Shown one piece after another: positions 1 through 40,823 of a stretch of DNA of 64,000 nt (its first letter is position 1; each line of letters starts with the position of its first letter). This stretch comes from Zygnema circumcarinatum SAG 698-1b (Eukaryota; Plantae; Zygnematophyceae): assembly GCA_037447605.1 (NCBI GenBank), contig CM074821.1, positions 1 to 64,000 on the forward strand, read 5' to 3'. Both the position numbers and the translations under genes were made by a program. The notes below the pieces were generated by a model. The model was not told where the DNA came from and searched no databases. It saw nothing but the letters and a program-made list of their open reading frames with translations.

Positions 1-846
1 TAAAATTTAAAAATTAAAATTAAAAATTAAAAACCTAAAAACTAAAAATTAAAATTAAAAATTAAAAATTAAAAATTAAAAACCTAAAACCCTAAAATTA
101 AAAATTAAAAATTAAAAATTAAAAATTAAAAACTCAAAAATTTAAAAATCAAAAATTAAAAATTAAAAATTAAAAACCTTTAATCTAAAACCCTAAAAAT
201 CTGAAAAATTAAAAATTAAAAATTAAAAATTAAAAATTAAAAATTAAAAATTAAAAATTAAAAATTTAATAACTTAAAAATTAAAATTAAAAATTAAAAA
301 TTAAAAATTAAAAGTTAAAAATTAAAATTAAAAATTAAAAATTAAAAATTAAAAATTAAAAATTAAAAATTAAAAATTAAAAATTAAAAATTAAAAATTA
401 AAAATTAAAAATTTAAAACTTAAAAATTAAAAATCTAAAAATTAAAATTAAAAATTAAAAATTAAAAATTAAAAACCCTAAAAAACCTAAAAATTAAAAA
501 TTAAAAACTTAAAAATTAAAAATTAAAAATTAAAAATTAAAAATTAAAAATTTAAGAATTAGAAGCATGGAATCTAAAAATTAAAATTAAAATTAAAAAT
601 TAAAAACCTAAAAATTAAAAATTAAAAATTAAAAATCAAAAATTAAAAATTAAAAATTAAAAATTAAAAATTTAAAAATTAAAAATTAAAAATTAAAAAT
701 TAAAAATTAAAAACTTAAAAATCAAAAATTAAAAATTAAAAATTAAAAATTTAAAAATCAAAAACTTAAAAATTAAAAATTTAAAACTAAAACCTTTAAC
801 CTAAAAACCTAAAAATTAAAAACCTAAAAATCAAAAAACCTAAAAT
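1..846 (+). repeat. Telomere-like terminal array, dominant unit TTAAAAA (7 bp) with interspersed CCCTAAA/CCTAAAA/CTAAAAA/TCAAAAA variants
   Basis: Starts at base 1 with a 7-bp period. Exact plant telomere unit CCCTAAA occurs at 90, 191 and 476, with many CCTAAAA variants. C is present and G almost absent on +, as expected for the C-rich strand at a left end. A short unique insert lies near 555-575. Confidence 0.7.
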
Positions 847-1229
847 CCTTATAAAATCTCAAAAAATCATATGGTCCATATCAGTTCAAAATCCTTCATA
901 ACCCACAACGCATGATACGAATACTTCTGGCGAACACGATTTGACAGCCAATATGATGCTCCGAGTTTTCAATACCATCCTTCAAAAGCACAAGCAAACC
1001 TTACTGGTTTGAAAGTAAAAAATCGAAATCTAAAAAAAAAAACACAAAAATTGGATGTCAGTAAAAATATGAACTTCGAACGATCATCTGCTAATGTTAT
1101 ATGCACCTCATGAGGCGTGCGAAAATCTTCCTGATAATCCCGACCTGAGGTTGGTAGGGCCCCAGACTGCAGACAGGCCAAAGCAAAGCCCGCAACGCCC
1201 TTGAAGAGTTGAAGCGCAAGCTTTGTCCA

Positions 1230-5955: not shown

Positions 5956-6058
5956 GGCCGCCGTTCTGATGAGCGAGGGAGGGAGAGAGGGAGAGAGGGA
6001 GAGAGGGAAGGGAAGGCTTCTGCCGGGCAGAGCAGGGAAGGGACGAGACTGGGCGCTA

Positions 6059-6089
<31 letters not shown>

Positions 6090-6339
6090 GTTGGCGCCCG
6101 TCTACGTCCCTTTGTCCGTCCGTCCCTCACTCGCTCCCTCCCTGGCGGCGCCATCCGCGTGCGCGCCGTTGGAGTCGCTTCGCGTGTTTGTGTTTGTGTT
6201 TGGGTCTCCTGCTGACGTGGCTGCAATCCACAATCCGCTCCGCTGCCAGGTGGCGCGCCGCTGCCACGTCGGCGGGGGCCGGCGCCGAGGCGGGACGGGG
6301 AGGGCGCGGGCGTGGAGGAGCGTCCTGCCGCGTGGCGCC
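5956..6339. promoter_or_regulatory. Putative bidirectional promoter between OAT and CYP28
   Basis: 384 bp GC-rich interval between divergent ATGs; contains (GGCGAG)n and GA-rich simple repeats. Confidence 0.55.
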
Positions 6340-8085: not shown

Positions 8086-8633
8086 AAAATGTTCAATCTT
8101 CCGCAGAAGCACCTTTTCATTCCGAGTTACGAGGGTTTTAGGGTGCCTCACTCCTGTACAAACAGGTTTAATAAAGTTGCCTATACAGGAGCTTTATGAA
8201 ATCTTTTTCTTTAGTGTATTTTTCGAATTGTATCTCAGCATAAACCTTTTTCTTCACCAACTTGCGCCCGTGTCCCTATTTGTTCATATTTTCAAAGTCA
8301 GTAGATATGTACATCAGCAGGCCGCTTATCCTGGCTGAAATGTAAGTGTGATCCGCTGAGTCCCTTAAGATGTTGTTATCCTACTCATGTTTCAACATTG
8401 CACTCAATTGAATTCACTGTTCACCACTCGCCACAATTGCGCAATCAACTTGTCATGGAAGCGTTATGGAAAGCAAAGTGCGCTTCCTGAAAAAGTTGTT
8501 TGATGCAGATCATGGCCCGGGCCAGCCTTGGATACGTTGCCTTGCGTGCACAATACCCTGCACGATTGCTGGAACCAATGCGACTGCGATTGCGTGGTGC
8601 CACTAAGCACAGTCGAGAGTTCTGCCCCAAGCT

Positions 8634-14600: not shown

Positions 14601-17327
14601 CCGGCTTGGAGGTATTTTCTGGCGAGCTTCACAAATTCAGCAACTGAATGCGGAAGCATCTTCTCGAGGAGTTCATGATGTTTAATAGCTGCTTCTGCAA
14701 TCATGACGGCTTCAGCTCCTGTTGCTGTAGCTGCTTTCGTCCTCATTTCCTGCAGTTGAAAGTTGTCGACATTTATTAAAAAACATATTTTCAAGAAACG
14801 TCAATGAGCTCTATGATTCTTTAAATATTCTTTTTAGCGCAGCTTTACAAGCTTGTTCATAATACTATTCAATGCAAAAACTGTCTCTGAATTTCTGCGG
14901 AAAAACAGAACGCTCGTCAAGGATTCCACATCGATGAACTTCATGCAGTAGATTGGATTTGGTGCACTGACCTCCGCCTCAGCCTCCACTTCAGTGCACA
15001 GCACCCGCCATAACAATGACTGTTCCGCATCCATAAAGGTGGCAGGTTCACTTCGCTCAGAGTTCTCCATCCCCTCGCCGGACTCGTCTGGGCACACAGT
15101 AATCACGAAGTTAGAGATGATGGTTCGCCTGCCTTGACCAGATTTGGCTTCCCCTGTACAACCGCATTCTTAACTCCCATGTCCGCTCCTACTCCATGGC
15201 GCCCTGACGATCAGAGATTTTTATCATGAACGATTTCTTACCGTTAAATGCACACCTGAAACCCAGCTCGCCAGGTTCCAGAAGTTTCCTTCTCCTCAGA
15301 TTCATGATTACCAGCTCTCCAGCGGTTTCATGTGTTTCAACGTCCAGGTACTTAAGCAAGGTCAAGACGTTTCCTTGAGAATCTCGACTTAACCAACAGT
15401 TAGCCAACAGGTCTGAGCATGCTTTCCCAACGGAAGGCTCGAGTTCTGTCAAGCCCCTCTGCAGCAGGTCGGCTCGTTGATATATGCTGCATACAGAAAC
15501 TGAACAAAGAATGATGTTTTGCACATGCAGTCGCTGGAAATGTCAGCTCTCTCTTGTGCCAACTAAAGTCGAGTCTCTGCTTGAATTCATTAGTTACAGT
15601 AATCTGTCACGAACTCAAGGACAAGGTTTGCACATTCATTGCATCTTGCAATCGAACAAAATTCGCATGAACTGGCAATGATGTTTTCTGAGTAACGCTG
15701 TTCAGCGCCCCCTGCATGGGGTCAAAACAGACAATGCTTTTCCCAACAACTACCCTGAAGGACTGTGATCAATTCAATAGGTGCTTTAGAAACGCTCTTA
15801 TTGTCATGTCACTGAGCTTTCAAGCATTGATTTGAGGTAAAACCAAAACAAGGAGCCAATACGAACGGCACAACAATCACTGGATGGACAAGGATGCTCT
15901 GCCTGCTCTTCCACTTCATGCAACCTCTTGGGATGTCAATTTGTTCCAAGCGTACGTACCTGAAACTGGTAATCGGAATGCATTGCAACTGGGTATATGC
16001 TACTTCCCGCACTGACTTCTCCACATCTGAAGTACGCCTTATGATATCCTTTATTGTTGATGACATTGGTGGCATGGACTTGAGGATAGCAGATCGCACA
16101 TCCTGGCAAAACATGAAGCATGAGCCAGTAGCGTTCCCACTTTAGCCGACCAGAATGTTTCGCAAACAGGCTAAAGCGAACAAAAATACGCGACAGCTTA
16201 ATGTAAGCCATCGATGGGGTGTAAAACGCTCTCCAGAAGCAGCATATTCCCATCCAGCAGAATGGACATTGCAAAAAATTACTGCAAGCCTACAGATGGC
16301 GTTGTTCAAGCACTGAAACTCTTTAGGGTCATTTGATGGCATCGCGATCGTGAGATCAATGCCACAAAAAAATTCCTTTAGGGTCAAGGTTGCACTTGAA
16401 AAAGTTTTTAGAAGCTCGTTGACGCTGTCATTCTCCTGAAAAGCGGATAGACAAGCAAAGGTACTTTTGCACCTTGTCATTTTCTATGGCAAGAGCCTGT
16501 CGATACAGCTGTACTGTCGAATCTTCACCAGGTTCTTCGTCTGCACATGAGACAAGTCTTGCCAAAGCGATGGCTGCCATTTTCCGAACTTCTGGCACCT
16601 TGTCCTCCATTCGAGATTGCATGCATGATAGAATATCCTCAAAAGTGTCAGCGCAAAGGTCTTGGTCTGAGGGGAACTTGATCAAAATCTGTGATGAAAG
16701 GGGAAAGCATTGGTAAAAGAGTGAGGCAAGATTATCCCACTAAAAAGGATTTCTGGGATTAGACAAGAGAACGCTGCTGTTATCGTGATATGATGCAGCT
16801 TACAGCGTTATCGTTTAAACTGCAGTTTAATTCACTTCTAGAGTGTTTTCGCGCAAGTTAACGTCCTTAAGTTTGACTAAGGATAATACTTTATTTGCAA
16901 GGCAGCTAAGATTGCTGTGTTTATTGTAAGGAGAAGCGGCAGCCAGTACTATGTGGTTTTGCTTTCTTACCTCTGCAATCAGCTGCGTTGAATAAGTCCG
17001 TACTAAGTTTTCTTGCGACGAAGCGCAAAGTATGAGAAACCTAAAAAGCTCCGCCACGAAGTCCAGCCACGAGTTCTCTTTTCCCTCCTCCAGCCAAAGT
17101 GCAAAACGGACGACAAACTTCAGAACTTTTTGTACAGGAGCTCCTCGTTTATTCGCGACGAGAGCGTGCGATAAGCATCGCTGGAACTCTGGAAAAAATT
17201 CAACCTGAAAATCCTCACGACAGTTGGCGAGCAAGCGAGCGTGACGTCTATGCACAGTGACACTGCGCTGGCATTCGTCGAACGCCCTCGAAACTGCCGT
17301 TTTCGGAGGCTCCCGCTTGCAAGCCAT
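8634..17327 (-). CDS. NCAPG: Condensin I complex subunit CAP-G (HEAT-repeat), multi-exon, with long low-complexity C-terminal tail
   Basis: Exons include 16971-17327, 16473-16688, 15960-16102, 15242-15486, 14972-15153, 14602-14749, 13692-14131, ~12717-13258, 12465-12522, 11928-12200, 11437-11570 and 10952-11079. Motifs: FDECQRSVTVHRRHA, RMEDKVPEVRKMAAIALARL, RRTSDVEKSVREVAY, RDSQGNVLTLLKYLDVE, AVRCLGLYCLLD, LRKCLGAFF. The 3' exons between ~10650 and the terminal ORF (stop at 8634) are less certain. Confidence 0.85.
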
Positions 17328-27600: not shown

Positions 27601-29528
27601 ATCCTGGTTGGAACCGCCTTCCTGTGCTCCTCCAATGCCCATTTCTTTCAGGATGTTACAGAAAACTATAAAATCTCGAAATCGTCGCTCTACTAGCCAT
27701 TCCTTAGTCGCATTCGTAACCTTAATTATGTACAGAGTATGCTCCTTCACTCCAACCACTCTATCGCCCAGGGACACCTGTCCTTTCACTTGCTTTGCTC
27801 CAATTACCTCCGTGTGCAATATCCGTTCCTCCCCCGACGGGCCTTCCCGTCGGGCAACCTCCCCCGACGGCCCGGCGAATTCATCCTCCTCTAGCAATTC
27901 AATTGTTGCTGACTCACGACTCTTGTTTTTGGAAACATTGTCTGCCCAAGCTCCCCAAATGCCTCTGAACAAAGAGGCATCTCCTCCTCCTGGGGGCTGT
28001 CGAGCACCGAACGACTCCGCGGCATGAAAATGGTGCGCACGAGCACCCGCAGATTCCCGACAGCTGAACTCTGCGTCTGGATGGAGGAGGACGTCCTCCA
28101 TGTCGGCCACCATGTCCATGTACGCTTCCTTCACCTCCATGCGCTCCACATACCTTACTACCTGGAGCAGATATAAAAACCCTCATGGTGGATCATGAAA
28201 TCATAAACACTTACGCATCAAAATTCAATCTCGACAAAGCCGGATTTCAACGAGCTATCTCGCAAGTAGGGCTAAGTAAGACCACTTCCTCCACCCTCCT
28301 CGTGAAATGACATGGTACCGTGTGCATGCTTCCCCTGTTGGGTGTCACTCGTTCCTAGCCAATAATAGAGGGTATTGTAAGCTTGGAGTGGACAAGACAA
28401 CAATAGGAATAAAATTTCAATTAACTTATAAAGGGACATAAGTGAGAGGTGGGAACACCGGCACTCTTCCAGCTACCAATTCTGCTAATGCATGTTGCAC
28501 AAGATGCCAATAAATAGATTGTTGATGGAGTGGGCCAAATGCGAGTCATGGTGTTTCGACGTTCATGGAGCCCAAGCTATGTTGACAGGAGTTAGACTCC
28601 GCTTTTGAGGACATGGATTACTCGTTAAACCGTTGCCATAGGGGATGCAGAAAAACTCAACGATGTTTGAAGTTCTAAGGAGACTCTACCGATTTCAGTC
28701 TTAACTAGCACCTAGGCTATTTGCGCAAGTGTCCTTCCCACCATAATGGCCAGTCCCGGCTCTCACCTCATCTGACCCCAATTCATTCAAAGTCGACGGT
28801 TCCACCAGTCCTCTTCGCTCCGGCAAGTCCTTCTCTACTGAACACGGGAATACGCTCTCATGGGACGTCATCCTCATGGCAACAGCATGTGTCCTCTCTG
28901 CTTCAGACGCGTCCAAAATTTCTGGCTGCTCAACCGTCCTGTTACGACTTCTCCTTTTCAGGCCCTCTCTGTTACTGAGACTGTCCGATGCATGATCAAG
29001 TAAATTCGCGCCTCCGTCCTCAATTCTCGGCCTGTCCGTAACACAACGCGCTGCTTCGTCCCTGGTCTCCGCGATCCTGGATACACTTTCGTTTTCAATC
29101 AAGGTCCTTCCTCGCAGAAATTGGGCACATTCTGATTCTCCCGGTTCTTGCAGCCGTCCCTTGCTCTCGCTCTGCATTGCAACGAACTCACTATGCCCTC
29201 GCCGTCGTGCAGCTCTCCTGCTGGCGGGTTTCCCTGAGGCATCACTGGAGCTCGCAGGCCCGGCCGAGTCGAGCCCCGCTTGTTGCAGCGGGGCGGGCCT
29301 GCCCGGCCGCCTGCGCGCATCCTTGAGGGCGGGCGCGGCGTAGAACGCGAGGTCCGCGGGCGGCCGCGCGGCGCCGCTCCTCCGCCGCGCCCTCGCCCTC
29401 GCCCTCGCCCTCGGCCCCGCGTGCTGCTCCGCGTCCCCGGGCGGCGGAAGCGGCAGCGGCAGGAGGGGCGTGTCGGAGTCGCTGGAGGAGGAGAGGAAGG
29501 AGGGCTCCCGTCTCGCGGCCATGGCCAT
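24665..29528 (-). CDS. Phox (PX) domain + Rubicon-homology (RH/DUF4206) zinc-binding domain protein
   Basis: PX: HTLYIIKV..EWLVERRFRDF..IERRSLLLQSCL (27500-27750). RH: QHYRCGGC, RPRLCEYSGQLLCGGCHAG..IPARVLHFWDF, KVSQLAKAYLDSIHDQ-PMLC, HIKRSCAAC, CSGCGALLHKAC..CESC. The start (MAMAARREPSF, 29528) and the stop are tentative. Confidence 0.75.
26821..26910 (+). repeat. Intronic 14-bp minisatellite, ~6 copies (consensus GCCATTAGCCATGT)
   Basis: Tandem degenerate units read directly from the sequence, inside an intron of the PX-RH gene. Confidence 0.85.
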
Positions 29529-30126
29529 GGACGGGCGGTCATGGCCGGCGGAGGAGGATGCGGGCGGCCCTCGCCGACCGTCCGTACGGCACTCAATACG
29601 CTCGCGGTACGATACGGTACGATATTTCGGCACACACTCGATACGCCGCCTGTGCATCCGGCGGGGGCATGAGGGGGCGCAGACGGAATAGCAAGTGCAC
29701 AGACGGGGCTGCTTTCGACCAGCACAGAGTTTCATAAGCGATCGCTTGATTAAAAAGATGTCTGTGCTGCTGCTACTCAGTAATGCAGTCTGCTGCATTT
29801 ATGGGCGCGCGACTCTGGATCAGCGCATAATTTAGGACATTTGGGCTGGAAGAATGGAGCATCCAAACTTCCTCGCCGCTTATCTTGCAGACCGACTTCC
29901 AGCGAAATAGCTCTGAGTTACATATCTACCCGACAGATGACTCACCCAAGTCAGACTCTGCCCTAGTCAATGAGCAACACTTGACCATGCTTCCACGCAT
30001 AGGGCGCCTCTAATACCTACTGCGATTATTATTTAAAATAAGGTTTGCTTTCTCTGGATAATTTGCTCACTACAATACCCAAAGTTTTAGGTGAGCTAAC
30101 CCAACAGCCCTCTCGGTCAGAGCTGA

Positions 30127-33100
30127 TCATGTCCGGCACCCCCCTGGGTATTTAGGCTTGCAGAGGTTGGTCCGGCCCGGATAGAGGCTTCTGTTTCTGC
30201 AGACAAAGCCACGATAGGCGCGGCCGTTCCAGTACTGCAGGAGCTTGTAGCTGCAGTGGTACATTCGCGCAGCCAGATTGGCACACGTGTCGCCCAGCCG
30301 CACCGTGTAGCAGCCGTATTTGCACGGGCATTTGCTGGCAGCCAGAAGAGCGCGCCGCCGTGCTGGCTCGGCCAATGGAATGGCGGGGACAAAGCTGAGT
30401 GTACAAACCTGCAGTCAAATGCACCAACCAAGCGGGCAAGGCTCAAGCACCACACATAAGGCTCATAAGGCATAAGGCGCTTGCTCTTGACAAGGTTATT
30501 CTTTGCTCACCTCGTCCCCTAAACGCAGATTATCGCAGTCGATCCCAGCGTTAAGGCGGAAAAAGCTCAGCTCGTCGAGCTGGTTGCGGGCGATAATGGC
30601 ATTGCATGTGTCCTGCTGGCGTACTCTATCGTAAGCGCTGCAGGGGTAACCCACCGCAGATTTATACCCGTATTCCACACATACCTGGAGGGAACATCCA
30701 CAAACGGATGGGCATCCGCATTAGAAAGACCCTGAGAGGAGCCACGACAGTGGATCTCCCGGACGGCAGTGCAAATGAATGGTCCGCGGTAGAGCAGTCA
30801 TTGCATTAGGGTGGCCAAGCTGCACCGCGAGCAGGCAAGAGTCGTGGACGGGCGGGAGTACCGTGGTTCGCGGGCTGCAAGTGCAGTTTGAGCCGTCCAA
30901 GCAGATGGTAGGGTTCAGCGCCGCAAAAGTCTCCCTACTGAGGCCGAAGAGCGCCCGGACGCCTTCGCACGACCGGGTCTGCACACGCCCTCCCCTCCTC
31001 CGTCAAAGTCAGAGGCTGACTCTGAGCCTGCTCGTTCAGACAGTGGGCCAGTGCAGTGCAGTGCAGTGCAGTGCAGTGCAGTGCAGCACCTGCGAGCCGA
31101 GCATGAAGGGCGTGGCGCAGCGGCTCTCCGCCGCGTCGGTGACGGGCCCCACTACCACCGCACTCCCGCTGACAGTGCTGCAGTCCACTCCCTGCCAGCA
31201 CGCACTCCACAAACGGAATTGAGGACGTATTCATGGGGAAGAATCAATGCAAAGTGCAGACGCGGAAGTGGGAGACTAGCTAGCTCTCAGTGAGGTGTCG
31301 AAACAAATGCGGTAATGGCTTGAAATTTCCACAGCCGGAAGTGTCATTGAAAATTAGAGTGACTGCTCCACTAGGTAAGTTTTTAGATCCTTTTCATGGT
31401 TTTTATACTCAGGACCAAGATGCTATACTAGCAACCCTTTGTTTTTTTTTTCAAACAGCATTGTTTAGTAGTTTTGGATGAATGTACAACGTGAACTGTG
31501 AGCACTCCACTCCTTGACTCTGCTGCTTCCATCTGCCATCAAGTCTGATCTCATACGCGTAAAAGCCGGAAGTGCAAATTGATAGAGGGACTGCAACAAA
31601 CCGCACATCATTCAGAAAAAAGAAGGTAAGAAAGCTAAGGCCGTTCTCAATGGCTGCTGTAACGCAGCTTCCTCCCTCCGGGACCACATAAATGTTGTCC
31701 ACCGAGTTGATTCCATACGCGGAGTCTGCAGGACCACCCACCCCAGACCCGCAGCCGTCACTGTGAAAACAGAGCACTAGTGTTAAACAACTGCAGCTGT
31801 AAGCCCCGCACAAGGGCGGCAGCGCCGGCAGCAGAGCTGCAAGGCCACTCGCTTGGTTTCAGAAATTCCCAAATTCAGTGAACGTTCTAGAAATTCATGC
31901 ATATACATATTTGGTTTTGAAGCGGATCCATGGAAACCTGCTCGTAACTGTGCAATTGCAGCCGGCTTCGGCATCTCGGTGTAGAGGCTTCTAGTTACAC
32001 GTCAACTTTTCGTGTAACTTTGTTAATGTAACAACTTTGTTCGTTAATTTTTTTTGCAATGACGGTAAAGTGTAGTACTACTACTCACTGGCGGTGCAGG
32101 TGACCGCCCCCCCGCTGTCCTCGGCCAGCAGCCACCCGGGCGGGCAGCTGCAGGAGTACCCCCCCGCGCCGTCGCTCGCGCAGCGGCCGAGGGAGCACGG
32201 GTTGGCCGACCCCCTCCCGCAGACGTCCTCTGCCTCCCCGCGGGCCAAAGCCAAAGGTCAGTCACCGCTCACTGGACGAACGGCTTCACAACTCGGACAC
32301 GTCATGAATATGTCACAGCATGACAAGCATCAAGGGGGAGGTGGTTAATAAGTGACCATTGCAGCATCCAGTCTAGGAAACAGATGGGTGAAAGTCACAT
32401 TCATAAACGCAAAGGAAACACCATCAGCTATTTGAAAGATACGCGTTTGAGGATCCGCTGGAGAAATTATGTACAAGAGAAAGAGGCTATAGGCGGCCAT
32501 TTGATAGGGCCACCCGAGCATAGATTGACGATTTCACGTATGGTCAACGGTGATCTTCGGGGGCCGACTTATTAGAGGTGCCGCTTCCGGCCAGCGGGCC
32601 ACTCGCCCCAATGCAGTCAGCGGCGGGTCTGCAATGCATGCATGAGCAAACCCGGCCATCCTTCCAGCTGGCCGGATGAGAGGCGTCTGCTTCAGAGGGG
32701 AAGTGGGGAGCATAGCCAAAAGGGCTGGGCTTGTTTATACTTGCGGATGCCGTCCTGTTTGTTTCAACTTCTCTGCAAATGGTTGCCTTAAAGCCGCACA
32801 ATAGTTCGCTGGTAGCTCCTGCACAGCTTTGGGTTTTCCCCAACAGAAAGTGGCGCTCGCTGCTTACCAAAAACGCATGTAGGCAGCCCTGACAGGTCGA
32901 CGACGCTAACGAAGCCTGTTGGGCAGGAGCAGGTAAACGGAAAGCCGCCAGAAGACGCTGCGGTCGAAGGCACACAGCTTCCCCCTCCACACAAAAATGG
33001 CGCCCCGCTTGGGCAGCCGTTGCCGAGAGGTGGTGGTGGAGGCAGACGCGGAGGAGGTCGGTGTGGTGGCAAGGGAGGCGGCCGCGACGGAGGAAGCGGA

Positions 33101-36100
33101 GCTGGGGAAGGCGGGGGGGCGGGAGGAGGCGAGGACGGAGGGGGCGGCGAGGGAGAAGGTGGGGGTGGCGGAGAAGGGTGTGGCGGTGGAGGTGAAGACG
33201 GAGGGGGCAGAAGGGGGGGAGAGGGGGGGGGTGGAAGAGGTGGGGGCGATGGAGGAGGTGGGGGCGATTGAGGAGGTGGGGGCGATGGAGGAGGTGGGGG
33301 GGAGTGGGGCGGGAGTGGAGATGCTGATTCCACAATAGTCAAGACAAAAAAAAAAAACCACATCAACGTTAGATTTGAGCCCATGAATCTTTTGAGGTAC
33401 AGGTTGTTGGTGGTAGTTCGCTGGCTTGTCATAAATCTCAAACACAAACTGCTGGCGAGAGTGTGCGGCAACTGCTGAAGAACGTGAGCAAACAACCCTG
33501 CGGGTGGCGAACGTCTTCAGAAGGATCAACGCAATCCAACCTCTTGGTTTTAAGGGCACCCGTAGCTTACACATGTGAATGCTGTCACATAGACGTTCCA
33601 TATTATTTCAAAAAGACGACAGCAAAGACATGAAAGAGACGAACGTAGAGAATGCATGAAGAAGGTGCCAACGAGCAGAAAATTGACGGGAGAAACGGTT
33701 GGGGCCGGGACATGCATACCAAGAAAAACTCCGAAAACCTTCACTTCACAGAGAGTGAGGACAGCGTCATTCCCCGGAAGGTAGACCCACACGAAGCGTC
33801 CGACGAGGGAGGAGCACTTCTTAACGAAGGGGAAGCCGGAGGAGGTGTTGGAGTATGTGAACACGTTGGCGGGGTCGCACTCGTTGTTCCCCCGCGCGGC
33901 CCACGAGGCGTTGCTCGGCCCGAGCCACAGCGCGGCCCCGTTCAGCCGCTCCTGGCAGCACTCCGTACGGCCGTACAGCTCCACCCTCTGCACGCGCGCC
34001 GGCGAGCCGAGGTCGACCTTCCACCAAACGGGGGAGCTGCCCACGCCGAACTCCGTGTGCGTGCACGTGCCTGACCTGCGCGGGTCGTCGACAACTCACG
34101 GAATTCACACACGGAGTTTGGCACAAAGGGATGGCTCCTTCTAGTTTTTCACGTTCAGCTTGTACTTTATGTCGATGAAGTATACTTGTCTTAAGGTGGG
34201 ATGTCGTACTGACTAACACTTTTGCTTGTTTTGTCCCGTTCGGTGCAAGATATGCTTTCACTGCAGCCGGAGCCTTTGCCACATTCCTATTCCTGAAATT
34301 CATTGACGGCGTGCGCAAAAAAATAACAAGAATAGAAAGAAATAGCATCTAACGCAAAGCTTGGGGCAGCTTGAAAAAACCCTAAAATTTCTCTGAAAGT
34401 GTATATGCTCAAGTGTGGCTTATGTCACGGGACGGTGATGTACCAGAAGTTTCCGTCGGCCGTGTTCCCATCCACCGCGTAATACGCCGCGCATCCGCTC
34501 GCGTAGTTGCTGCAGTTCATGGTGGTGCTCTCGAACGAGGGGCGGCCCACCGCCAGGTTCTCTGCGGACCCCCATAACCGCCGGGCCAGCTTGAGAGGGG
34601 CGTGGTCGGTCGATTCATAGCCAGAAGAAGCGCATGAAGTCAGCAAATTCTCACCTAAAGCGACAGGAGGAGGCGGAGCAGGGCTTGGGGTGGCAGGAGT
34701 GGCAGACTCCGCCAAAAGTCGACGCCTTCGGCTGAGGTTAGCCGGGGCTGAAACTGCAGTAAAAGGCATAAAAAGGGACCATTTAAACAACCAGACACGA
34801 AACTGTTCGGGCTCACCAGAGAGAGTCAGAGAACTGCTAGCGAGTCTCTGGAAGAAAGCTGAACACTGGTCGATTTGATTATAAAACGTCTGAACGCGAG
34901 CAAAAAGACTTTATTCTGCGTGAGTTCCCAACACACTAAAAGCGAAGTTCTATGCGAATGAAGCAATGTCAATTACCAATCGACGGGAGTGGACCCCTCT
35001 CTGCATGAAGGGGAAGGCATGCATGTGCAGGAGGGAGGGAGGGAGGGAGGGAGGGAGGGAGGGAGGGAGGGAGGGAGGGAGGGAGGACTGACGCAGCGGG
35101 TAGGCGACCGGGTAGACGGGCGGGACGAGGAGCATGTTGCAGGTCCCGGGCCCCCTCTCGGCGGTGCGGCGGATGCGGAGGAGGCCGGCGGCGGGGCCCC
35201 ACGGCGCGCGCGCGAGCCAGAAGCCCTCCCCGAAGCCGACGAGGAGCAGCGCGAGGTCCACCGTGTCGCGCGTGCAGTTGCGCCCCTCGTACACCGCGCC
35301 CTGCGCCATGCTCAACCAGCGGCGACCGGAAGGCAAAGAATCGGTTGAGTTGCGAGATTGGCACAGCACCGTCACAAGCTCGCTACTGCTTCAATTTCAT
35401 GTCCAAACTTGTTGAATCAGGTTGAAAAAAAAGGAATTGTCCTAAAACATCACATGTCATACAATTAGGTAGTACTGTGAAAGGGTGCATTGTCCTACTT
35501 TGTATTCGTTTCGGACTAGAAAAAAACGCTATGGAATTTGATAAGAGCGAAAGTAAGTTCGTATTTCGCTAGTACTATTTTTTTTTCCGGAAAGCATTGA
35601 CCTCACAATGGCGACGCCATCGTCTGTGCATAGAAAATCGCTGCACTGCGCGAAGGAAGTACAAAAGTAGTCCCGCACAGCATCGAGGACCGGCGCGTTG
35701 GCCGAACCACTTTGCGACACGTGGACGAGCGGCCCCGCAACGGGAGTGTCCCCCTCCGGCCCGCGCCCTTTTGTTTGCAGCTCGGGGAGCGGCAGCCAGC
35801 TCGCAGAAATTGTCACGAACGCATCGACATGCGAATCAGGGTGTGCTAAATTCGTTTCTCTCTCACTCTTGCCACCTCGCTGTGACTGAGAGAGAAAGAG
35901 GCTGCCAAATGAAAGGGAGAGCGAGAGAAATGGATGCTTCTCTCTCCCTGTGTCTCTCACTCTCACTTCCACTCCCGCTCTCTTGCTCTTTTCCCTCACC
36001 TCGTCCTCTCATGGCTCCCTTCTCCCTCCGTCTCATGGGAGTGAGTGCAGTGTGTGAGAGAAAGATTGCGAGAGAGGGCGAAGGCTACCAAGAGAGAGGG

Positions 36101-39100
36101 AGAGGGAGAGAAAGAAATGCCTCTTTCTCACTCCTTTGCTCTCTCTCACAGCACACACACTCTCTCTGTTCCTGTTCTTTCTCTCCTGTTCCCACGCTCG
36201 CATCCGTCTCCCTCTGTGTCACGGAAGTGAGAACGAGAGGGACACTAAAGAGGAAAAAGGCTACCACGCGAGAGGGAGAGAGAGAGAAAAGGAATGCCAC
36301 TCTGTCCCTTACTCTCTTGCTCTTTCTCAAGGGACCCTCTCTCTCTCCTTCTTCTCACGTCTCTCGGGAGTGAGAGTGCGCGCGTGCGAGAGAGGGAAAG
36401 GGAGAGAGGGAGAGAGAGAGAGTGAGAGAGAAGTGCCGACAAGACCTCCTCTCCCAGTCTCCGGTACATTTTACAGTGCGACATGTGGCGTCGCACGATG
36501 ACAATCGGCCAATGACACACGTCACATTTTGGGAGCAATATCGCTGGGCGTAATAATTTGGTCAGCCTATGCCTACCAGCTGAACCGGAAACTTAAATCA
36601 ATTTAGTGACTAAATACAGTTGGGGTAAGTGCAAATGTATTTTTTTAAATACAGTTCGACGGAAATGTACTCCTGTTTAGAAGGGCAACCCGTACACCGA
36701 CTTGTGAACGCGACGAAACTTGAGGCTTTGTCTAGTCAAATTTCTTTGTATCCCTTGCTTAGTGCGGGGCATAATGAGGGGCAAGATGCGAAAGGGGAGG
36801 TAGCGAGTGCTCACCGAGCGCCAGTCGCGCAGGCCGCCCTCCGAGGAGATGCCCACGACCACGGGCTGCCTCGCCACGGCGCGCAGCAGCGCTGCCGGGT
36901 CCTCCGTCGGAACGCGCTCCCACTCTACAATCTTAGGCCCTGAAAGAATGCCTTCCTGCAAAACGGGACCCCCTTGGACTGTCAGATGTAAGCTGCTACC
37001 TTTTTGCAAGGTTTTAGCTTTTCCAAAAGCCTGAAGGAAAGGTGATCACGACGGCCCATCCTTTGCTTGAGGACGAGGAGTGAAAGGCGCCTTTGCAGCA
37101 TCCTCACCACTGTCGAATTGGTGCAGGAGCCGTGAAAACTGCCTTGCGTAGAGATGGAGCCCACAGAGGCTGCGTACTCGAGAGCGTCCTCCGTCCAGCC
37201 CCCCCGGCAGGAGCTGAAGGGCCCCGAGCAGGCGAGCAGCTGCTCCGCCGCCAGACCCGGCCCCGCGTACCGCGCGCCGCCCCGCCCCTGCGCGACCAAA
37301 AGGGCGCCCTGGAGGGCCTCCGCCGCGCTGTAGGCCCAACTCCCGTCTGCGCCCCCCCCCCCCCTCCCCGCTGCGCCGTCACTTCGCCGCATACAAATTT
37401 TCTTTTGAAAAAACGTTGAAATTCCCCCTGTTTCAGACGGGGTTTGCACAAGAGAGCCCCTAGGGGCGGGGAACGTACTGCAGGAGCCCTGGTCCTGTGG
37501 AGGCCCAAAGAGGTGCGACCAGTCCACGCTTGATGGAAGGCTGTTGCTGCTATCATAGCGGAAATGCTTGCTGAGCCGCTTCACAGTGAGGATGCGCTCC
37601 TCATCGGCCTCTAGGTTGAGCTCTAGGCCAGTGGTGCGATTGCTGCTGGGGACAGGGGAAGGGCCGACGCAGGCTTCTACATTCTCTGCCAAGTCGCATA
37701 GGCCCGTGCTCTCATCGAAGAGAAGCCCGTCCTCACAGCGTCCAGAGGCCACTTGGACTCCGTTCTGGCACGTGCAGAAGAAGCTGCACAGGCCGCACCC
37801 ACCCGCCCTTCCCAGCGTGAGCGCGCGCCCCGACGCACGCGGGGCCGCGCGGCGGCAGAGGGGCGGAACTGACCGGCAGACCGGCGGCAGGCTCCGGTCG
37901 GCGTGCACTCCGTCCGCTCTCCCGCTGCAGCATTGCGGCAGAGCCTGCGAGAGCAGCAGCATGCCCGCCCGCCCGCAGTGTGAGGTTCGCTCAGTTTCCG
38001 GACCAGCCTAACCGCTTCTCGCACCACTTCGTCAGCAGCCGCCCTTAAACTCTACCAGCGAGCGCATTTGAACTAACCTTGACAACGACAAATGAGAATT
38101 TCTTTCCAGTTTAAAGCATCTCCTAACTGATGATAGTACTTTTTTGTTTGTGAAGATCTTCAGTAATGTGATTAGGAGTTGCAAGGAGAGGGGATACACC
38201 CACAGTGTAAGGGGGTGGTGGACTGCCAGGTGGAAACGGAGGAAAAGGGGGAAAAGTCGGAGGAAAAGGAGGAGGAGGCGCGTTGCTTGGAGTTGGCCTG
38301 CGATGCCTCCCCACGCCGGGCGGGTGCCGTCCACGGGGTCGCCGCTTTCCAACGCCGGGCGGACGCTTTCCACTAGGCTTCCTCTTTCCCACGCCCGGAG
38401 GATGCCGCCCGACGCCGGGCGGGTGCCGTCGAGAGAGCAGCCAGCGGCGTGTGGCAGCGGCCTGCCCTCCCTTTGCCGCATCCCCGGACCCCCCTCCCCC
38501 GGCCTGCCCGCGGCTGGACGGCGCGAAGGCGACCTCCTCGCAGACGCTCGTGACGGGGGAGAACAGGAAGCCTTCCGGGCAGTCGGCCTCTAGGACGACG
38601 CGCCCTCCGCGGCAGCGCCGGAACGAGCTCCCGATCCTGCTCCTGCTCCTGCTCCTGCTCCAGCGCCCACGCGCGGCAGTCAGCGCCTCGACTCCGCCCC
38701 GGGACGGAGCGGGGGGGAGGGGAGGGGAGGGGCGCGGCGCGCACCTGCTGCCGCTCTGCGGCTCCGCGCGCAGCGCCACCGCCAGCTCCAGCCCGTCGCG
38801 GCGGCCCGCGCAGGGTCCGCCCCCGCCCCCGTCCCCGCCCTGCGCCCGCCCGCCCGCCGGCCCCCCGCGGTCGGTAAGTCGGTTCGGTCGGTCGGCGACG
38901 CCGGGCGGCTGACGCGGCGGCCCGCCCCGGAGGACGCGAAGGACCTTCCGTACGCCGCCGTAAGGCCGGTAGGCCGGCGACGTACGGCCGCTCTGCGACA
39001 GTTGGCTCCGCGGGCGCGGGTCCTCTCCCCTCTCTCCCCGGCCGCCCGGGCGGCCCCGCCATGGCGGGGGGGGGAACGCTCGCGCAGAGCCAGCCATGGC

Positions 39101-39325
39101 GGGCCAGGGCCATGGGCCACGCCCAGGCCCATGCTCGCGCAGACTCACCCGTTCCTCGACCGCTCCCTCGAGGCTGCTGTTCTGCGCGACGCCGCCGTCC
39201 GCCCCCGCGGCAGAGGCAGCGCCCAAATGCATAAGCAGCACCAACACGCAGGCCGCGGCGCAGAGCGTGCGCGCCACAGTGAGGCCACGCCTTTCCTCGG
39301 ACGTCAGAATGTGCCAAGAGCGCAT
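30127..39325 (-). CDS. Large secreted mosaic protein: signal peptide - CBM14-like x2 - inactive papain (C1A) domain - F-type lectin - Ser/Pro-rich rod - EGF-like x2 - LysM-like x4 (~1,300 aa)
   Basis: Phase-consistent GT-AG chain with no stop: 39149-39325, 38745-38992, 38204-38636, 37874-37944, 37479-37783, 37108-37346, 36815-36955, 35093-35300, 34655-34753, 34444-34561, 33720-34075, 32868-33323, 32089-32229. LysM exons follow at 31607-31760, 31090-31191, 30862-30978, 30511-30684 and 30127-30408. Only the 32089-to-31760 junction is unresolved: it needs a small 3n+1 exon (e.g. 31938-31974) or a weaker alternative donor. Confidence 0.75.
31049..31083 (+). repeat. (CAGTG)7 intronic microsatellite
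   Basis: Seven perfect copies read directly. Confidence 0.9.
35031..35086 (+). repeat. (GGGA)n intronic microsatellite
   Basis: About 14 copies immediately after the donor of the papain C-terminal exon. Confidence 0.9.
35880..36430. repeat. Alternating GA-rich and CT-rich low-complexity tracts in the 1.5 kb intron of the mosaic gene
   Basis: Blocks such as gagagggagagggagagaaag alternate with ctctctctcacagcacacacactctctctg. Confidence 0.75.
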
Positions 39326-39665
39326 GGCTGCACCTGCAAGGCGCAGGACGCACCGCAATCAGACATGACTGACGTGCCGCCTCGCAGCTCCTCCGGCCCG
39401 CGCGGCCGTGCTCCCCTCGCTCCCCCCCGCTGCCACCCCTCTGCCTGCCTCCCCGACGATAGAAGCGCCCGCCGGCAGCACTTGCGCACTGTTGCGTGCA
39501 GAAGCGAGCAAGCGGTACCTGCTCGGAAGTTGCGCATTGAAGCGCGTCGGCAGGTGCGGGCGGCAGCGCGGGCTGGCGCCCCAAGGCAGGCCGCGACGGG
39601 CGTCGCTTGCGCTCAACTCCGGTCCGCGTGCGTGCGTGCGTGCGTGCCCGCAACCCGCGGCCGGC

Positions 39666-39880
39666 CTCTCCCTCCTCTCTCCTCTCCCTTCTCTCTCTCT
39701 CTCCTCTCTCTCCTCTCTTCTCTCTCTCTCCTCTCTCTCCTCTCTTCTCTCTCTCTCACCTCTCTCTTCTCTCCCTTTCCCTCTCCCTCCCCCTCCCTCC
39801 CTCTCTTCCTCTCCTCCCTTCCTCCCTCCCTCCCTCCCTCTTTTTCTCTTCTCCCCTCCCTGCCTCTCCCCTCTCCCTCT
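39666..39880 (+). repeat. Polypyrimidine (CT-rich) tract upstream of the mosaic gene
   Basis: About 215 bp almost entirely C/T. Confidence 0.9.
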
Positions 39881-40415
39881 CACTCGTCGGCCGCACGCCG
39901 CCGTCCGGCCCCGCCCGCCCGCCTGCCCGCCGCCGCAGAATCGCAGCGTGGCCGTACGGCGGGGTCCGCGTGGCATGCGCGGCGTATGGAGCAGCTCGCC
40001 GCCTTCGCGTCCGTCCGAGACCGCGGGCGGCAGCGGGCGAGCGGGCGGTCGGTCGGTCGGTGGCGGCAGGTCAACGACGACGAACGTGCGCGGGCGGGCC
40101 GCCCGCCCGCCTGCCTGCAGCGAGCCGGCCCGCCAGTGGGGGCGCGCGATTGGCCGGACATGCCCGGGCCTCGAACTGTGCCCCTGCGTCACGTCCCGTC
40201 CCGTCACGATCGGGGCCCCGACGGTGACGACCCCCGTCCGTACTGTTTCGTACCATTCACACATTCCGTACCATGTTCGTACTTATCGTACTTCTCGCAC
40301 GTTTCTCCGTGGTCACGTCACGAGCACGAAAAAATGCACGTACTGTACCCCCCCGAGGCAACGAATCGGGCCGGGACCAACCCTGCATTGCGGCCGTTCA
40401 CGCTCCCCAGACCGA

Positions 40416-40418
40416 CAC

Positions 40419-40465
<47 letters not shown>

Positions 40466-40494
40466 CAGCGACAAACAGAAACACACAGACAGAC

Positions 40495-40529
<35 letters not shown>

Positions 40530-40566
40530 CACAGACAGACAGAGACAGACAGACACACAGACAGAC
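40416..40566 (+). repeat. (ACAG)n imperfect tetranucleotide microsatellite
   Basis: About 150 bp of ACAG/ACAC/AGAG units. Confidence 0.92.
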
Positions 40567-40823
40567 AACACCACAAAGGCAGAAGGCAGTTGCACCAGGT
40601 CGGACCATTGCATCAACCATTAGGGGGAGCCAGACCTTGACTATCGCTTACGAGGCTCCCGAATTCCTTATACGAAAGGTCACTTCTTTCGTGTACGAAT
40701 TCCGGGTCGGGATCCGCGGGTCTGCCGTACACAGTCCTAGCGAAATGGGCACCTAGCCAATGCTTAATTTGCCCGACAGGCTTACAAAATTGACTTGGCG
40801 ATGGTCAAGGTCTGACTCCCCCT

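What the first reader, a model, noticed from the sequence alone, without database searches (positions are those of the whole stretch)
30127..39325. Giant secreted multi-lectin protein built around a dead papain domain (CBM14x2 - pseudo-C1A - F-type lectin - SP rod - EGFx2 - LysMx4)
Seen: the six-frame track shows only scattered fragments, but manual splicing gives 13 consecutive phase-consistent GT-AG exons from a hydrophobic signal peptide to the second EGF, then five further in-phase LysM exons, with no intervening stop or new gene start. Established knowledge: CBM14 and LysM bind chitin/GlcNAc polymers (LysM also peptidoglycan), F-type lectins bind L-fucose, and SPPPP rods are hydroxyproline-rich wall glycoprotein spacers. 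Inference: an extracellular glycan-sensing or cross-linking scaffold that combines three unrelated carbohydrate-binding folds with an enzymatically dead protease. Candidate roles are microbial pattern capture (fungal chitin, bacterial peptidoglycan), mucilage/wall assembly, adhesion or mating recognition. I do not know a characterised protein with this architecture.
Basis: partly seen in the sequence, partly recalled or inferred. Interest (0 to 1): 0.88.

Follow-up and report, generated by a model that had tools for sequence, protein, structure and literature searches.

The report
Secreted algal multi-lectin with dead protease
This is a real, expressed 18-exon gene of a green alga related to land plants, encoding a secreted 1,217-residue protein that strings several sugar-binding modules around a papain-type protease domain that has lost all three catalytic residues; it is an unusual member of a larger, so far unstudied algal protein family.

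Summary
On the minus strand, 18 GT-AG exons (39325 to 30127) give one open frame of 1,217 codons. These run from the papain middle exon to the stop codon. The six 5' junctions rest on homology only.

Domain calls:
- **Solid:** CBM14-2, a papain fold with Ser/Leu/Ala at Cys25/His159/Asn175, an F-type lectin with its His/Arg/Arg triad kept, a Ser-Pro rod, EGF2, and LysM1, 3 and 4.
- **Degenerate or weak:** CBM14-1, EGF1 and LysM2.

The architecture is not unique. Closterium species and Mesotaenium carry papain-EGF-LysM or CBM14-papain proteins with an intact triad. This scan has already noted the family 21 times on other DNA of this genome, and this stretch once. New here are the dead triad and a 305-residue insert of linker, F-type lectin and rod.

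My best reading is a non-enzymatic extracellular glycan-bridging scaffold. That function is inferred, not shown. "Giant" overstates the size. Interest is moderate.

The parts
39149..39325 (-). Exon 1. Start codon at 39325. Signal-peptide-like N-terminus (aa 1-40, h-region TLCAAACVLVLLMHLGAASA) followed by a short acidic stretch.
   Evidence: It is the first ATG after an in-frame stop. It holds the only hydrophobic 19-aa window of the protein, KD 2.14. The donor is GTGAGT. It was not checked on RNA.
38745..38839 (-). Exon 2. N-terminal half of the degenerate CBM14-1 (PCAGRRDG...).
   Evidence: It resembles the CCSGRADG start of CBM14-2 and has a phase-2 intron at the equivalent place. Inferred; not checked on RNA. 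Read unspliced, it stays in frame.
38204..38657 (-). Exon 3. C-terminal half of CBM14-1, then basic HPPGVG[RK] repeats and a Pro-rich stretch ending PPPPYT.
   Evidence: Pfam CBM_14 scores 20.8 bits against a cut-off of 22.1; my own CBM14 HMM scores 15.7 bits. The same (HPPGxG)n + Pro-rich linker follows the signal peptide in the homologous locus L001, ORF 3282-4280. The donor could be 38204 or 38198; both are in phase.
37874..37944 (-). Exon 4. N-terminal half of CBM14-2 (CCSGRADGVHAD...).
   Evidence: Removing the 90-nt intron gives an ungapped 49-aa match to Mesotaenium P0014 residues 28-76 at 43% identity.
37479..37783 (-). Exon 5. C-terminal half of CBM14-2, the NRTTGL linker (there is no I29 propeptide), and the start of the papain domain up to QDQGSC (Gln19 kept).
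   Evidence: Pfam CBM_14 31.5 bits. The spliced CBM14-2 matches my CBM14 HMM end to end, 47.3 bits. L001, L002 and L003 have the same exon end after QGSC.
37108..37346 (-). Exon 6. Papain domain with Ser370 (37339-37341) at the Cys25 position, inside an N-G-S sequon.
   Evidence: Pfam Peptidase_C1 28.2 bits. PDB alignments to cathepsin L place the Ser at residue 25. Relatives L001/L002 also read DGSWA[YF]S.
36815..36955 (-). Exon 7. Middle of the papain domain (VPTEDPAALLRAVARQPVVVGIS...).
   Evidence: 63% identical to the L001 exon, with the same boundaries. Its 3' end is joined to 35300 in RNA contigs of four runs.
35093..35300 (-). Exon 8. C-terminal part of the papain domain. Leu510 stands at His159, Ala526 at Asn175, and three residues are missing from the NSWGxxWG loop.
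   Evidence: PDB alignments to mexicain and glycyl endopeptidase. Alignment with 24 Closterium proteins. The RNA contigs are identical to the genome here.
34655..34753 (-). Exon 9. Linker (SAPANLSRRRRLLAESATPATPSPAPPPPVAL).
   Evidence: Junction 34655->34561 is seen in four runs. Junction 35093->34753 fits the length of X1 contig record 5 and the zero depth across 34887-35067.
34444..34561 (-). Exon 10. N-terminal strands of the F-type lectin domain (ENLAVGRPS...AVDGNTADGNFW).
   Evidence: Junctions on both sides are seen in four runs. It continues directly into the exon 11 domain.
33720..34075 (-). Exon 11. Core of the F-type lectin: His642, Arg672, Glu674 (where the family has Asp), adjacent Cys675-Cys676, and Arg679.
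   Evidence: PDB matches: FBP32 3CQO E 1.3e-29, eel agglutinin 1K12 E 1.9e-11, pneumococcal fucolectin-related protein 2J1R E 7.8e-5. Pfam F5_F8_type_C_2 46.6 bits.
32868..33323 (-). Exon 12. Ser-Pro rod (aa 755-853; 68% Pro, 15% Ser, no Tyr) followed by EGF-like module 1 (six Cys).
   Evidence: Composition. Junctions on both sides in four runs. EGF1 shows the Cys pattern only; Pfam gives nothing significant. The stretch is colinear with the Closterium EGF region.
32089..32229 (-). Exon 13. EGF module 2.
   Evidence: Pfam EGF 24.3 bits against a cut-off of 21.5. Junctions on both sides in four runs.
31607..31725 (-). Exon 14. First part of LysM1. The acceptor is 31725, not 31760.
   Evidence: Joint 32089->31725 is in all four runs and is in frame. 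An HMM built from Closterium LysM1 scores 18.0 bits on aa 964-1000.
31090..31191 (-). Exon 15. End of LysM1 (GVDCSTV...VVVGP) and a linker.
   Evidence: Joint 31607->31191 is in four runs. Junction 31090->30978 is inferred from the length of X2 contig record 6, because the donor sits next to a (CAGTG)n array that the tool skipped.
30862..30978 (-). Exon 16. LysM2, degenerate.
   Evidence: Only 7.7 bits with the Closterium LysM HMM and no Pfam hit. Its position is colinear with Closterium proteins.
30511..30684 (-). Exon 17. LysM3.
   Evidence: Pfam LysM 21.8 bits against a cut-off of 20.9. Closterium LysM HMM 32.0 bits. Junctions in four runs.
30127..30408 (-). Exon 18. LysM4 and the stop codon (30127-30129). 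There is no C-terminal hydrophobic tail.
   Evidence: Pfam LysM 24.6 bits. Junction in four runs. Homologous to the last LysM of the Closterium sp. Yama58-4 gene in L004.
28760..30126 (-). Apparent 3' untranslated region, or an overlap with a neighbouring transcript.
   Evidence: Contigs of X2, X3 and X4 that carry exons 16-18 run on for about 1.24 kb below 30000. Not analysed further.

Best explanation
**Shown.** One gene of a zygnematophyte-like green alga encodes a secreted, soluble protein of 1,217 residues. It is spliced and expressed in four RNA runs. The layout is:
- signal peptide
- degenerate CBM14
- basic HPPGVG[RK] repeats
- CBM14
- papain-fold domain without a propeptide and without its triad (Ser370, Leu510, Ala526)
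- F-type lectin with its fucose-binding His/Arg/Arg kept
- Ser-Pro rod
- two EGF modules
- four LysM modules

It derives from a lineage-specific family of secreted papain-EGF-EGF-LysM x4 proteins whose other known members keep Cys/His/Asn.

**Inferred.** Without a nucleophile-base pair it cannot cut peptide bonds. It would instead act as a multivalent bridge in the extracellular matrix.
- The F-type lectin, and perhaps the basic repeats, would hold it in the alga's own fucose-rich anionic mucilage or on fucosylated glycoproteins.
- The rigid glycosylated rod would space the two ends.
- CBM14 and LysM would bind GlcNAc polymers such as fungal chitin or bacterial peptidoglycan.
- The dead papain domain would be kept as a structural or binding module.
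For: - **Gene and transcript:**
- **Secretion signal only at the N-terminus, even Cys count (60):**
- **Domains:**
- **Triad loss:** alignments to solved papain-family structures and to 24 Closterium proteins that all keep C/H/N where their models are complete. RNA contigs show no differing letters over exon 8.
- **Lectin triad:** His, Arg, Arg and the Cys-Cys pair align with those of eel agglutinin 1K12 and FBP32 3CQO.
- **Family body:** colinear with Closterium proteins on both sides of a 305-residue insert.
- **Ligand context:** charophyte mucilage is described as anionic polysaccharide rich in fucose, galactose and glucuronic acid (PMC10762512). Secreted glycoproteins of Penium carry core alpha-1,3-fucose (PMC6027541).
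- **Not a decaying copy:** an open frame kept over 18 exons, every disulfide pattern in CBM14-2, EGF and LysM kept, and RNA word depth of about 50-400.
Against: - No binding, localisation or activity data exist.
- The six 5' junctions and the signal peptide are not verified on RNA.
- The lectin has Glu where the family motif has Asp.
- CBM14-1, EGF1 and LysM2 are degenerate and may not bind anything.
- The ligand of these algal LysM and CBM14 modules is unknown.
- The whole protein could not be run through Pfam or a structure predictor because a spliced product has no reference in these tools.
Confidence: 0.6

Rival explanations
1. The dead papain domain is a decoy or competitor. It would still bind the substrates of the active paralogues, or inhibitors that microbes secrete against them, and so regulate or guard those paralogues. 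The lectin modules would only place it where they act.
For: - Active paralogues or orthologues with the same body exist and are noted elsewhere in this genome.
- Gln19, Trp177 and the fold-defining cysteines are kept while only the catalytic residues changed.
- The closest relatives L001/L002 already carry Ser at Cys25 but keep His and Asn, which suggests stepwise loss under continued selection.
Against: - There is no evidence that the cleft still binds anything.
- Three residues are missing from the loop next to Asn175.
- An N-G-S sequon sits on the former nucleophile and may glycosylate the cleft.
- No inhibitor or partner is known.
Confidence: 0.15
2. It is a building block of the alga's own wall or mucilage, or an adhesion or mating protein. 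All the lectin modules would bind self glycans, and microbes would play no part.
For: - The Ser-Pro rod is typical of algal hydroxyproline-rich wall glycoproteins.
- The mucilage is fucose-rich.
- The basic repeats would suit anionic polymers.
- Depth is steady and fairly high in four runs from three studies, which fits constitutive expression.
Against: - CBM14 and LysM are GlcNAc-polymer binders in every characterised case (established knowledge). Chitin is not reported for zygnematophyte walls in the review read.
- The rod has no Tyr cross-linking motifs.
Confidence: 0.15
3. It is a recently disabled paralogue on its way to loss. It is still transcribed and spliced but has no selected function of its own.
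For: All three catalytic residues are lost along with part of a loop. CBM14-1 and LysM2 are degenerate. One run shows an out-of-frame alternative exon.
Against: - 3,654 nt stay open across 18 exons, with canonical sites throughout.
- The lectin triad and all structural cysteines are intact.
- The Ser at Cys25 is shared with two other species-level relatives, so this state is old.
Confidence: 0.07
4. These are two or more separate genes (a CBM14-papain gene and an EGF-LysM gene) that only look continuous.
Against: Spliced junctions chain every exon from 36815 to the stop codon in four runs, with similar depth throughout. Single contigs span papain-lectin-rod-EGF and EGF2-LysM1-4.
Confidence: 0.03

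Closest known systems
Closterium spp. 'unnamed protein product' / 'hypothetical protein' Peptidase_C1 + EGF + LysM proteins (e.g. P0071 and P0106 of Closterium sp. Yama58-4, GCA_947470075.1; P0097 of Naga37s-1; CLOM_g14793 of NIES-68)
   Same: The papain domain (aa 331-560 here) and the EGF-EGF-LysM x4 tail (aa 866-1202 here) align in the same order at 30-34% identity, E down to 1e-37. They include the final LysM motif R-G-[FW]-x-C-R-x-x-S-L.
   Different: They keep Cys25, His159 and Asn175, and their papain domain is followed by EGF within about 15 residues. Here 305 residues of linker, F-type lectin and Ser-Pro rod are inserted and the triad is gone. None is characterised; I found no paper.
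Mesotaenium endlicherianum ME000158S01651 (P0014), a CBM14-CBM14-Peptidase_C1 protein
   Same: A signal peptide, then a CBM14 starting CCSG.A.G.HAD, then a second CBM14, the NRT.GL linker and a papain domain without an I29 propeptide.
   Different: It keeps the catalytic Cys (CAACYSF). Its gene model stops inside the papain domain, so its tail is unknown.
Environmental homologue on Logan contig SRR9302961_755322 (L001), with L002/L003
   Same: The closest relative found: 47-63% identity per papain exon, the same intron positions, the same HPPGxG[KR] repeats and Pro-rich linker, the same CBM14, and Ser at Cys25.
   Different: It keeps His159 and Asn175 and the full NSWGxxWG loop. After the papain domain it shows a Cys-rich, PAN-like stretch and then a Ser-Pro rod, with no F-type lectin seen before the contig ends.
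F-type lectins (eel agglutinin AAA, PDB 1K12; striped bass FBP32, PDB 3CQO)
   Same: Sequence match over the whole core, with the fucose-binding His and two Arg and the adjacent Cys-Cys pair.
   Different: Glu stands in place of the motif's Asp. It is a single domain embedded in a plant-lineage mosaic. F-type lectin modules were recently reported in chlorophyte receptor-kinase ectodomains and are said to be unreported in land plants (PMC12757656).
Non-peptidase homologues of papain family C1A (e.g. Plasmodium SERA5, rodent testin, sponge silicatein alpha PDB 6ZQ3); named from my own knowledge, except silicatein, which appeared as a weak hit
   Same: A papain fold with Ser at the nucleophile position, kept in a secreted protein.
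   Different: Those keep His (and silicatein keeps Asn). Here His and Asn are gone too, and the domain is buried in a lectin mosaic.
Plant and fungal LysM proteins (CEBiP/LYM type receptors, fungal Ecp6) and CBM14 proteins (peritrophins, Cladosporium Avr4); named from my own knowledge
   Same: Extracellular, Cys-stabilised GlcNAc-polymer binding modules used in tandem.
   Different: No membrane anchor or kinase, and both module types sit in one chain with a lectin of a third fold and a pseudo-protease.

Membership tests
Papain family C1A (Pfam PF00112) | Sequence and fold similarity over the whole domain | tested here: met
   Peptidase_C1 scores 28.2 bits on the N-terminal fragment against a cut-off of 20.7, and 14.5 bits on the C-terminal exon. 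PDB hits include cathepsin L, ervatamin and mexicain. The domain aligns colinearly with Closterium papain domains.
Papain family C1A (Pfam PF00112) | Catalytic Cys25-His159 pair and Asn175 | tested here: not met
   Ser370, Leu510 and Ala526 stand at these columns. Gln19 and Trp177 are kept. It is therefore a non-peptidase homologue, not an active member.
Papain family C1A (Pfam PF00112) | I29 inhibitory propeptide ahead of the mature domain | tested here: not met
   There is no Inhibitor_I29 hit on 36985-38007. About 45 residues with a conserved NRTTGL motif link CBM14-2 to the mature start. Relatives L001/L002 and P0014 are the same.
F-type lectin (fucolectin) domain | Sequence similarity to solved F-type lectins | tested here: met
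   3CQO E 1.3e-29 (both of its domains), 1K12 E 1.9e-11, 2J1R E 7.8e-5. Pfam F5_F8_type_C_2 scores 46.6 bits.
F-type lectin (fucolectin) domain | Fucose-binding motif His ... Arg-x-Asp-x4-Arg/Lys with the adjacent Cys-Cys | tested here: inconclusive
   His642, Arg672, Cys675-Cys676 and Arg679 align with the motif of 1K12, but Asp is replaced by Glu674. The effect on binding is unknown.
F-type lectin (fucolectin) domain | Binds L-fucose | not testable with these tools
   This needs a glycan array or fucose-agarose binding of the recombinant domain.
CBM14 / peritrophin-A (PF01607) | Profile match above the curated cut-off, with six Cys | tested here: met
   CBM14-2 scores 31.5 bits against a cut-off of 22.1. 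After splicing it matches end to end at 47.3 bits against an HMM built from 409 repeat copies, and all six Cys are present.
CBM14 / peritrophin-A (PF01607) | A second copy (CBM14-1) also qualifies | tested here: inconclusive
   It scores 20.8 bits, below the cut-off, covering profile positions 16-45 only, and 15.7 bits with my own HMM. Four of six Cys remain. The two missing would form one disulfide pair (pairing taken from my own knowledge).
LysM (PF01476) | Profile match above the curated cut-off | tested here: met
   LysM3 scores 21.8 bits and LysM4 24.6 bits against a cut-off of 20.9. LysM1 scores 18.0 bits against an HMM of the Pfam-positive Closterium LysM1.
LysM (PF01476) | A fourth copy (LysM2) qualifies | tested here: inconclusive
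   It scores 7.7 bits and matches the middle of the profile only. There is no Pfam hit.
EGF-like (PF00008) | Profile match and six-Cys pattern | tested here: met
   EGF2 scores 24.3 bits against a cut-off of 21.5. EGF1 has the six-Cys spacing but no significant Pfam hit.
Zygnematophyte secreted papain-EGF-EGF-LysM x4 family (uncharacterised) | Colinear homology of the papain domain and the EGF-LysM tail | tested here: met
   blastp against 25 Closterium proteins gives two colinear blocks each, E 1e-37 to 1e-15. tblastn against the Closterium sp. Yama58-4 locus L004 agrees.
Zygnematophyte secreted papain-EGF-EGF-LysM x4 family (uncharacterised) | Intact catalytic triad and papain directly followed by EGF | tested here: not met
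   The triad is S/L/A. 305 residues are inserted between the two blocks. This is therefore a divergent variant of the family.
Extensin-type hydroxyproline-rich glycoprotein | Ser-Pro(3-5) repeats | tested here: met
   Residues 755-853 are 68% Pro and 15% Ser, in SPPPP-type units.
Extensin-type hydroxyproline-rich glycoprotein | Tyr cross-linking motifs; hydroxylation and arabinosylation | tested here: not met
   There is no Tyr in the rod. The modifications cannot be tested here. It works like an algal HRGP rod, not a cross-linking extensin.

The most novel reading that the evidence does not exclude
The algae closest to land plants would use a catalytically dead papain domain, displayed on a lectin scaffold anchored in their fucose-rich mucilage, as bait. 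The bait would capture either microbial inhibitors aimed at the active papain-LysM paralogues or the paralogues' own substrates, while LysM and CBM14 hold the microbe's chitin or peptidoglycan. That would be a pre-land-plant version of the protease-decoy logic of plant immunity.
Probability: 0.12. Interest if true: 0.75.

Novelty: new variant of a known kind. Interest (0 to 1): 0.5.

Why it matters
Papain-like proteases and LysM receptors are two pillars of extracellular immunity in land plants. Here both are fused in one secreted protein family of the algal lineage closest to land plants. I found no paper on this family.

This member is a natural loss-of-catalysis experiment inside that family. 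It keeps the whole chassis and gains a fucose-lectin and a rod. That implies the scaffold has a function that does not need proteolysis.

It also offers a handle for separating binding from cutting in the active paralogues. And it adds an F-type lectin, a mostly animal and bacterial module, to the streptophyte record.

Tried and rejected
With the GTGAGT donor at 32089 it shifts the frame and stops after 54 codons. I considered donor 32084 and an acceptor near 31838 as rescues. RNA shows 31725 instead.
2. **My first setting of exon 16 at 30982.** It broke the frame. Four letters (GCAG) are shared by both sides of the joint, so the true start is 30978.
3. **Search of 1.84 billion representatives with 36985-38007.** No near-identical protein, so this genome's own product is not in the library. 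Most hits were CBM14 repeat proteins.
4. **The look-up of encoding contigs for P0014.** Not on record.
5. **Metagenome scan with an alignment of the Ser-type papain exon.** One locus, L005: 72% GC, intronless, 37% identity. It is probably bacterial and says nothing about this architecture.
6. **PDB sequence searches with CBM14-2 and LysM4.** Only E 0.3-0.4, too weak to use.
7. **Paralogue in the window.** None; there are no tblastn hits outside 30000-39400.
8. **Rfam and tRNA scans of the window.** Empty.
9. **Not done.** RNA check of 35400-39325, because read laying allows one call of at most 6,000 letters.


Full report
**Gene model**

The region is eukaryotic DNA and the gene lies on the minus strand. 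Stop-to-stop fragments already carry recognisable domains: CBM_14, Peptidase_C1, F5/8-type-C-like, EGF and LysM.

Joining them through GT-AG introns gives 18 exons, from the ATG at 39325 to the stop ending at 30127. The CDS is 3,654 nt and the protein 1,217 aa.

**RNA evidence**

Nine runs of the same organism were found, six of which hold 65-77% of the sampled words of the locus. I laid four runs from three studies on 30000-35400. This was the only call allowed and it is limited to 6,000 letters.

All four runs are Logan contigs and all show the same spliced joints, with CT..AC ends on the plus strand (GT..AG on the minus strand):
- 34655->34561
- 34444->34075
- 33720->33323
- 32868->32229
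- 32089->31725
- 31607->31191
- 30862->30684
- 30511->30408

Loose ends at 35301 in all four runs read GAGCGCCAGTCGCGCAGG..., which is the plus strand from 36816 onward. So the 1,514-nt intron between 36815 and 35300 is removed.

Two joints lie in microsatellites that the tool skips: (GGAG)14 at 35030-35086 and (CAGTG)7.6 at 31049-31086. Contig lengths settle both.
- X1 record 5 is 1,316 nt = 50 (exon 7) + 208 + 99 + 118 + 356 + 456 + 29 (exon 13).
- X2 record 6 has 247 nt ahead of exon 16 = 30 (exon 13) + 119 + 98.

Depth is zero across 34887-35067 in every run. Single contigs therefore join the papain C-terminus, the lectin, the rod, EGF1 and EGF2, and separately EGF2 and LysM1-4. Word depth is similar along the chain (X2 about 100-185).

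With 31760 the frame breaks.

**The 5' exons**

Their support is comparative.
- The introns after QGSC, after ...SCT..V and after ...W.S are at the same places in the homologous loci L001 and L002.
- Removing the 90-nt intron inside CBM14-2 gives an ungapped 49-residue match to Mesotaenium P0014.
- Exon 3's odd basic repeat HPPGVG[RK] and its Pro-rich end (…PPPPYT) recur in L001. There they follow a clear signal peptide in a much more AT-rich genome: (HPPGxG)n, then …PPPPVSYT. So exon 3 is coding.
- Exons 1-3 and their two introns all lie in one stop-free frame of 70% GC DNA. Introns 1 and 2 are therefore the weakest part of the model. Left unspliced, they would add 132 residues without breaking the frame.
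- The N-terminus holds the only hydrophobic stretch of the protein (aa 14-40, A-S-A before the likely cleavage site). There is no C-terminal anchor, and the protein has 60 Cys.

**Domains**

| Module | Residues | Evidence | Verdict |
|---|---|---|---|
| CBM14-2 | 248-304 | Pfam 31.5 bits; end-to-end 47.3 bits after splicing | Solid |
| CBM14-1 | about 68-135 | 20.8 bits against a cut-off of 22.1; four of six Cys | Half-recognised |
| F-type lectin | 597-752 | FBP32 3CQO 1.3e-29, eel agglutinin 1K12 1.9e-11, pneumococcal fucolectin-related protein 7.8e-5 | Strongest call |
| Ser-Pro rod | 755-853 | 68% Pro, 15% Ser, no Tyr | Solid by composition |
| EGF1 | about 857-905 | Six-Cys pattern only | Weak |
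| EGF2 | 909-951 | Passes Pfam | Solid |
| LysM1 | 964-1008 | 18 bits against an HMM of the Pfam-positive Closterium LysM1 | Supported |
| LysM2 | about 1027-1066 | 7.7 bits | Weak |
| LysM3, LysM4 | 1082-1128, 1155-1200 | Pass Pfam | Solid |

In the lectin, His642, Arg672, Arg679 and the Cys675-Cys676 pair align with the fucose-binding residues. The motif's Asp is Glu674 here.

**The papain domain is dead**

Alignments to cathepsin L place Ser370 at Cys25. Alignments to mexicain and glycyl endopeptidase place Leu510 at His159 and Ala526 at Asn175, with three residues missing from the following loop.

In an alignment with 24 Closterium relatives and a canonical cathepsin, every complete sequence has C, H and N at these columns. 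Only the window protein has S, L and A. Gln19 and Trp177 remain. RNA contigs show no differing letters over exon 8, so editing does not rescue it.

The closest relatives, L001 and L002, read DGSWA[YF]S but keep VDHALL and NSWG. This suggests that Cys->Ser came first and the loss of His and Asn came later. That order is an inference from three sequences.

The Ser sits in an N-G-S sequon. There is no I29 propeptide.

**Family context**

P0071, a weak hit of the first search, is Peptidase_C1 + LysM from Closterium sp. Yama58-4. Its neighbour gene is Peptidase_C1 + EGF + LysM.

A search with P0071 returned 28 further proteins. All but one come from six other Closterium strains or from Yama58-4 itself, all are unnamed, and most carry Peptidase_C1 + LysM with or without EGF.

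The window protein aligns to them in two colinear blocks, papain and EGF-EGF-LysM x4. In Closterium the blocks are about 15 residues apart; here they are 305 residues apart. The linker, F-type lectin and rod are therefore an insertion into a conserved chassis.

The CBM14 head with the same CCSG...HAD start occurs in Mesotaenium endlicherianum ME000158S01651, which keeps its Cys. In L001 a Cys-rich, PAN-like stretch stands where the lectin is here. That fits module swapping at this position.

Earlier notes of this scan, which I treat as unchecked leads, list 21 findings with papain and LysM on other pieces of the same genome. Among them are CBM14-headed active paralogues and F-type lectin heads. 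One separate note covers this very stretch and calls all three catalytic residues substituted. My tests agree with that last note. My Closterium and Mesotaenium results independently show that the family is real.

**Mechanism**

What is shown:
- one secreted-type mosaic protein that is expressed
- a protease fold that cannot use a Cys-His or Ser-His mechanism
- a lectin with its binding triad
- several GlcNAc-polymer binding modules

What is inferred: the protein bridges glycans.

Charophyte mucilage is described as anionic and rich in fucose, galactose and glucuronic acid, with associated proteins (PMC10762512). Secreted Penium glycoproteins carry core fucose (PMC6027541). The F-type lectin, and the segment aa 168-212 (15 Arg/Lys, no acidic residue), would therefore have self ligands.

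CBM14 and LysM bind chitin or peptidoglycan wherever they have been studied (established knowledge). Those are microbial, not zygnematophyte, polymers. The Ser-Pro rod would hold the two ends apart.

Whether the dead domain is only structural, binds something, or competes with active paralogues cannot be decided here. These options are listed as rivals.

**Comparison and novelty**

I found no paper combining LysM, papain or cysteine protease with Zygnematophyceae or Closterium. F-type lectin modules next to LysM were reported in chlorophyte receptor-kinase ectodomains, and the authors call them unreported in land plants (PMC12757656).

Dead papain homologues are a known class. So the parts and the chassis are known kinds. 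The combination of a triad-less domain with an inserted fucolectin and rod is a new variant inside an uncharacterised family that the scan has met many times.

Interest is moderate. The family matters for the origin of plant extracellular immunity, and this member shows that the scaffold is kept without catalysis.

**Limits**
- Only one read-laying run was allowed, so there is no RNA check upstream of 35400.
- No whole-protein Pfam or structure prediction was possible, because the spliced product has no reference.
- The metagenome scan gave one irrelevant GC-rich locus.

Noticed in passing
window 35602-35860 (minus strand), inside the 1.5-kb intron: In run X4 one contig joins an alternative exon ending at 35602 (donor GTCAAT) to the acceptor at 35300. 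The exon ends in phase 2 while exon 8 expects phase 0, so this isoform looks unproductive.
   Followed up: partly
window about 28760-30126: RNA contigs carrying the last three exons run on for about 1.24 kb past the stop codon in three runs, and 241 nt in X1. This is either a long 3' UTR or an overlap with a neighbouring transcript.
   Followed up: no
window 37339-37347 (aa 368-370): The Ser that replaces the catalytic Cys is the third residue of an N-G-S glycosylation sequon. Relatives L001/L002 read D-G-S there, so the sequon is specific to this copy.
   Followed up: no
L001:3282-4280 and L001:5600-6508: The environmental homologue (Logan SRR9302961) has a signal peptide, about 20 HPPGxG[KR] repeats, a CBM14 and a papain domain with Ser-His-Asn. 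After that comes a Cys-rich PAN-like stretch and a Ser-Pro rod, where the window gene has an F-type lectin. A near-identical fragment is in ENA metagenome ERZ19025762 (L003).
   Followed up: partly
window 1-847: A (TAAAAAT)n array of about 117 copies is followed by AAAACCT-like units that recall the plant telomere repeat CCCTAAA. GC is 0.30 over the first 2 kb, against about 0.5 elsewhere.
   Followed up: no
window 39665-39885 and 40408-40567: A CT-rich array of 16-29 nt units lies just upstream of the start codon, and a (CAGA)41 microsatellite lies further up. Another CT/GA-rich low-complexity block fills 35850-36500 inside the long intron.
   Followed up: no
L005:9920-10222: A 72% GC metagenome contig (Ga0299912_10001637) encodes an intronless papain-like stretch that also has GSWA (Ser) at the nucleophile position. 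It is probably bacterial.
   Followed up: no
L004:1-2085 and 6001-14712: In Closterium sp. Yama58-4 two papain-EGF-LysM genes lie next to each other on opposite strands, which suggests local duplication of the family there.
   Followed up: no
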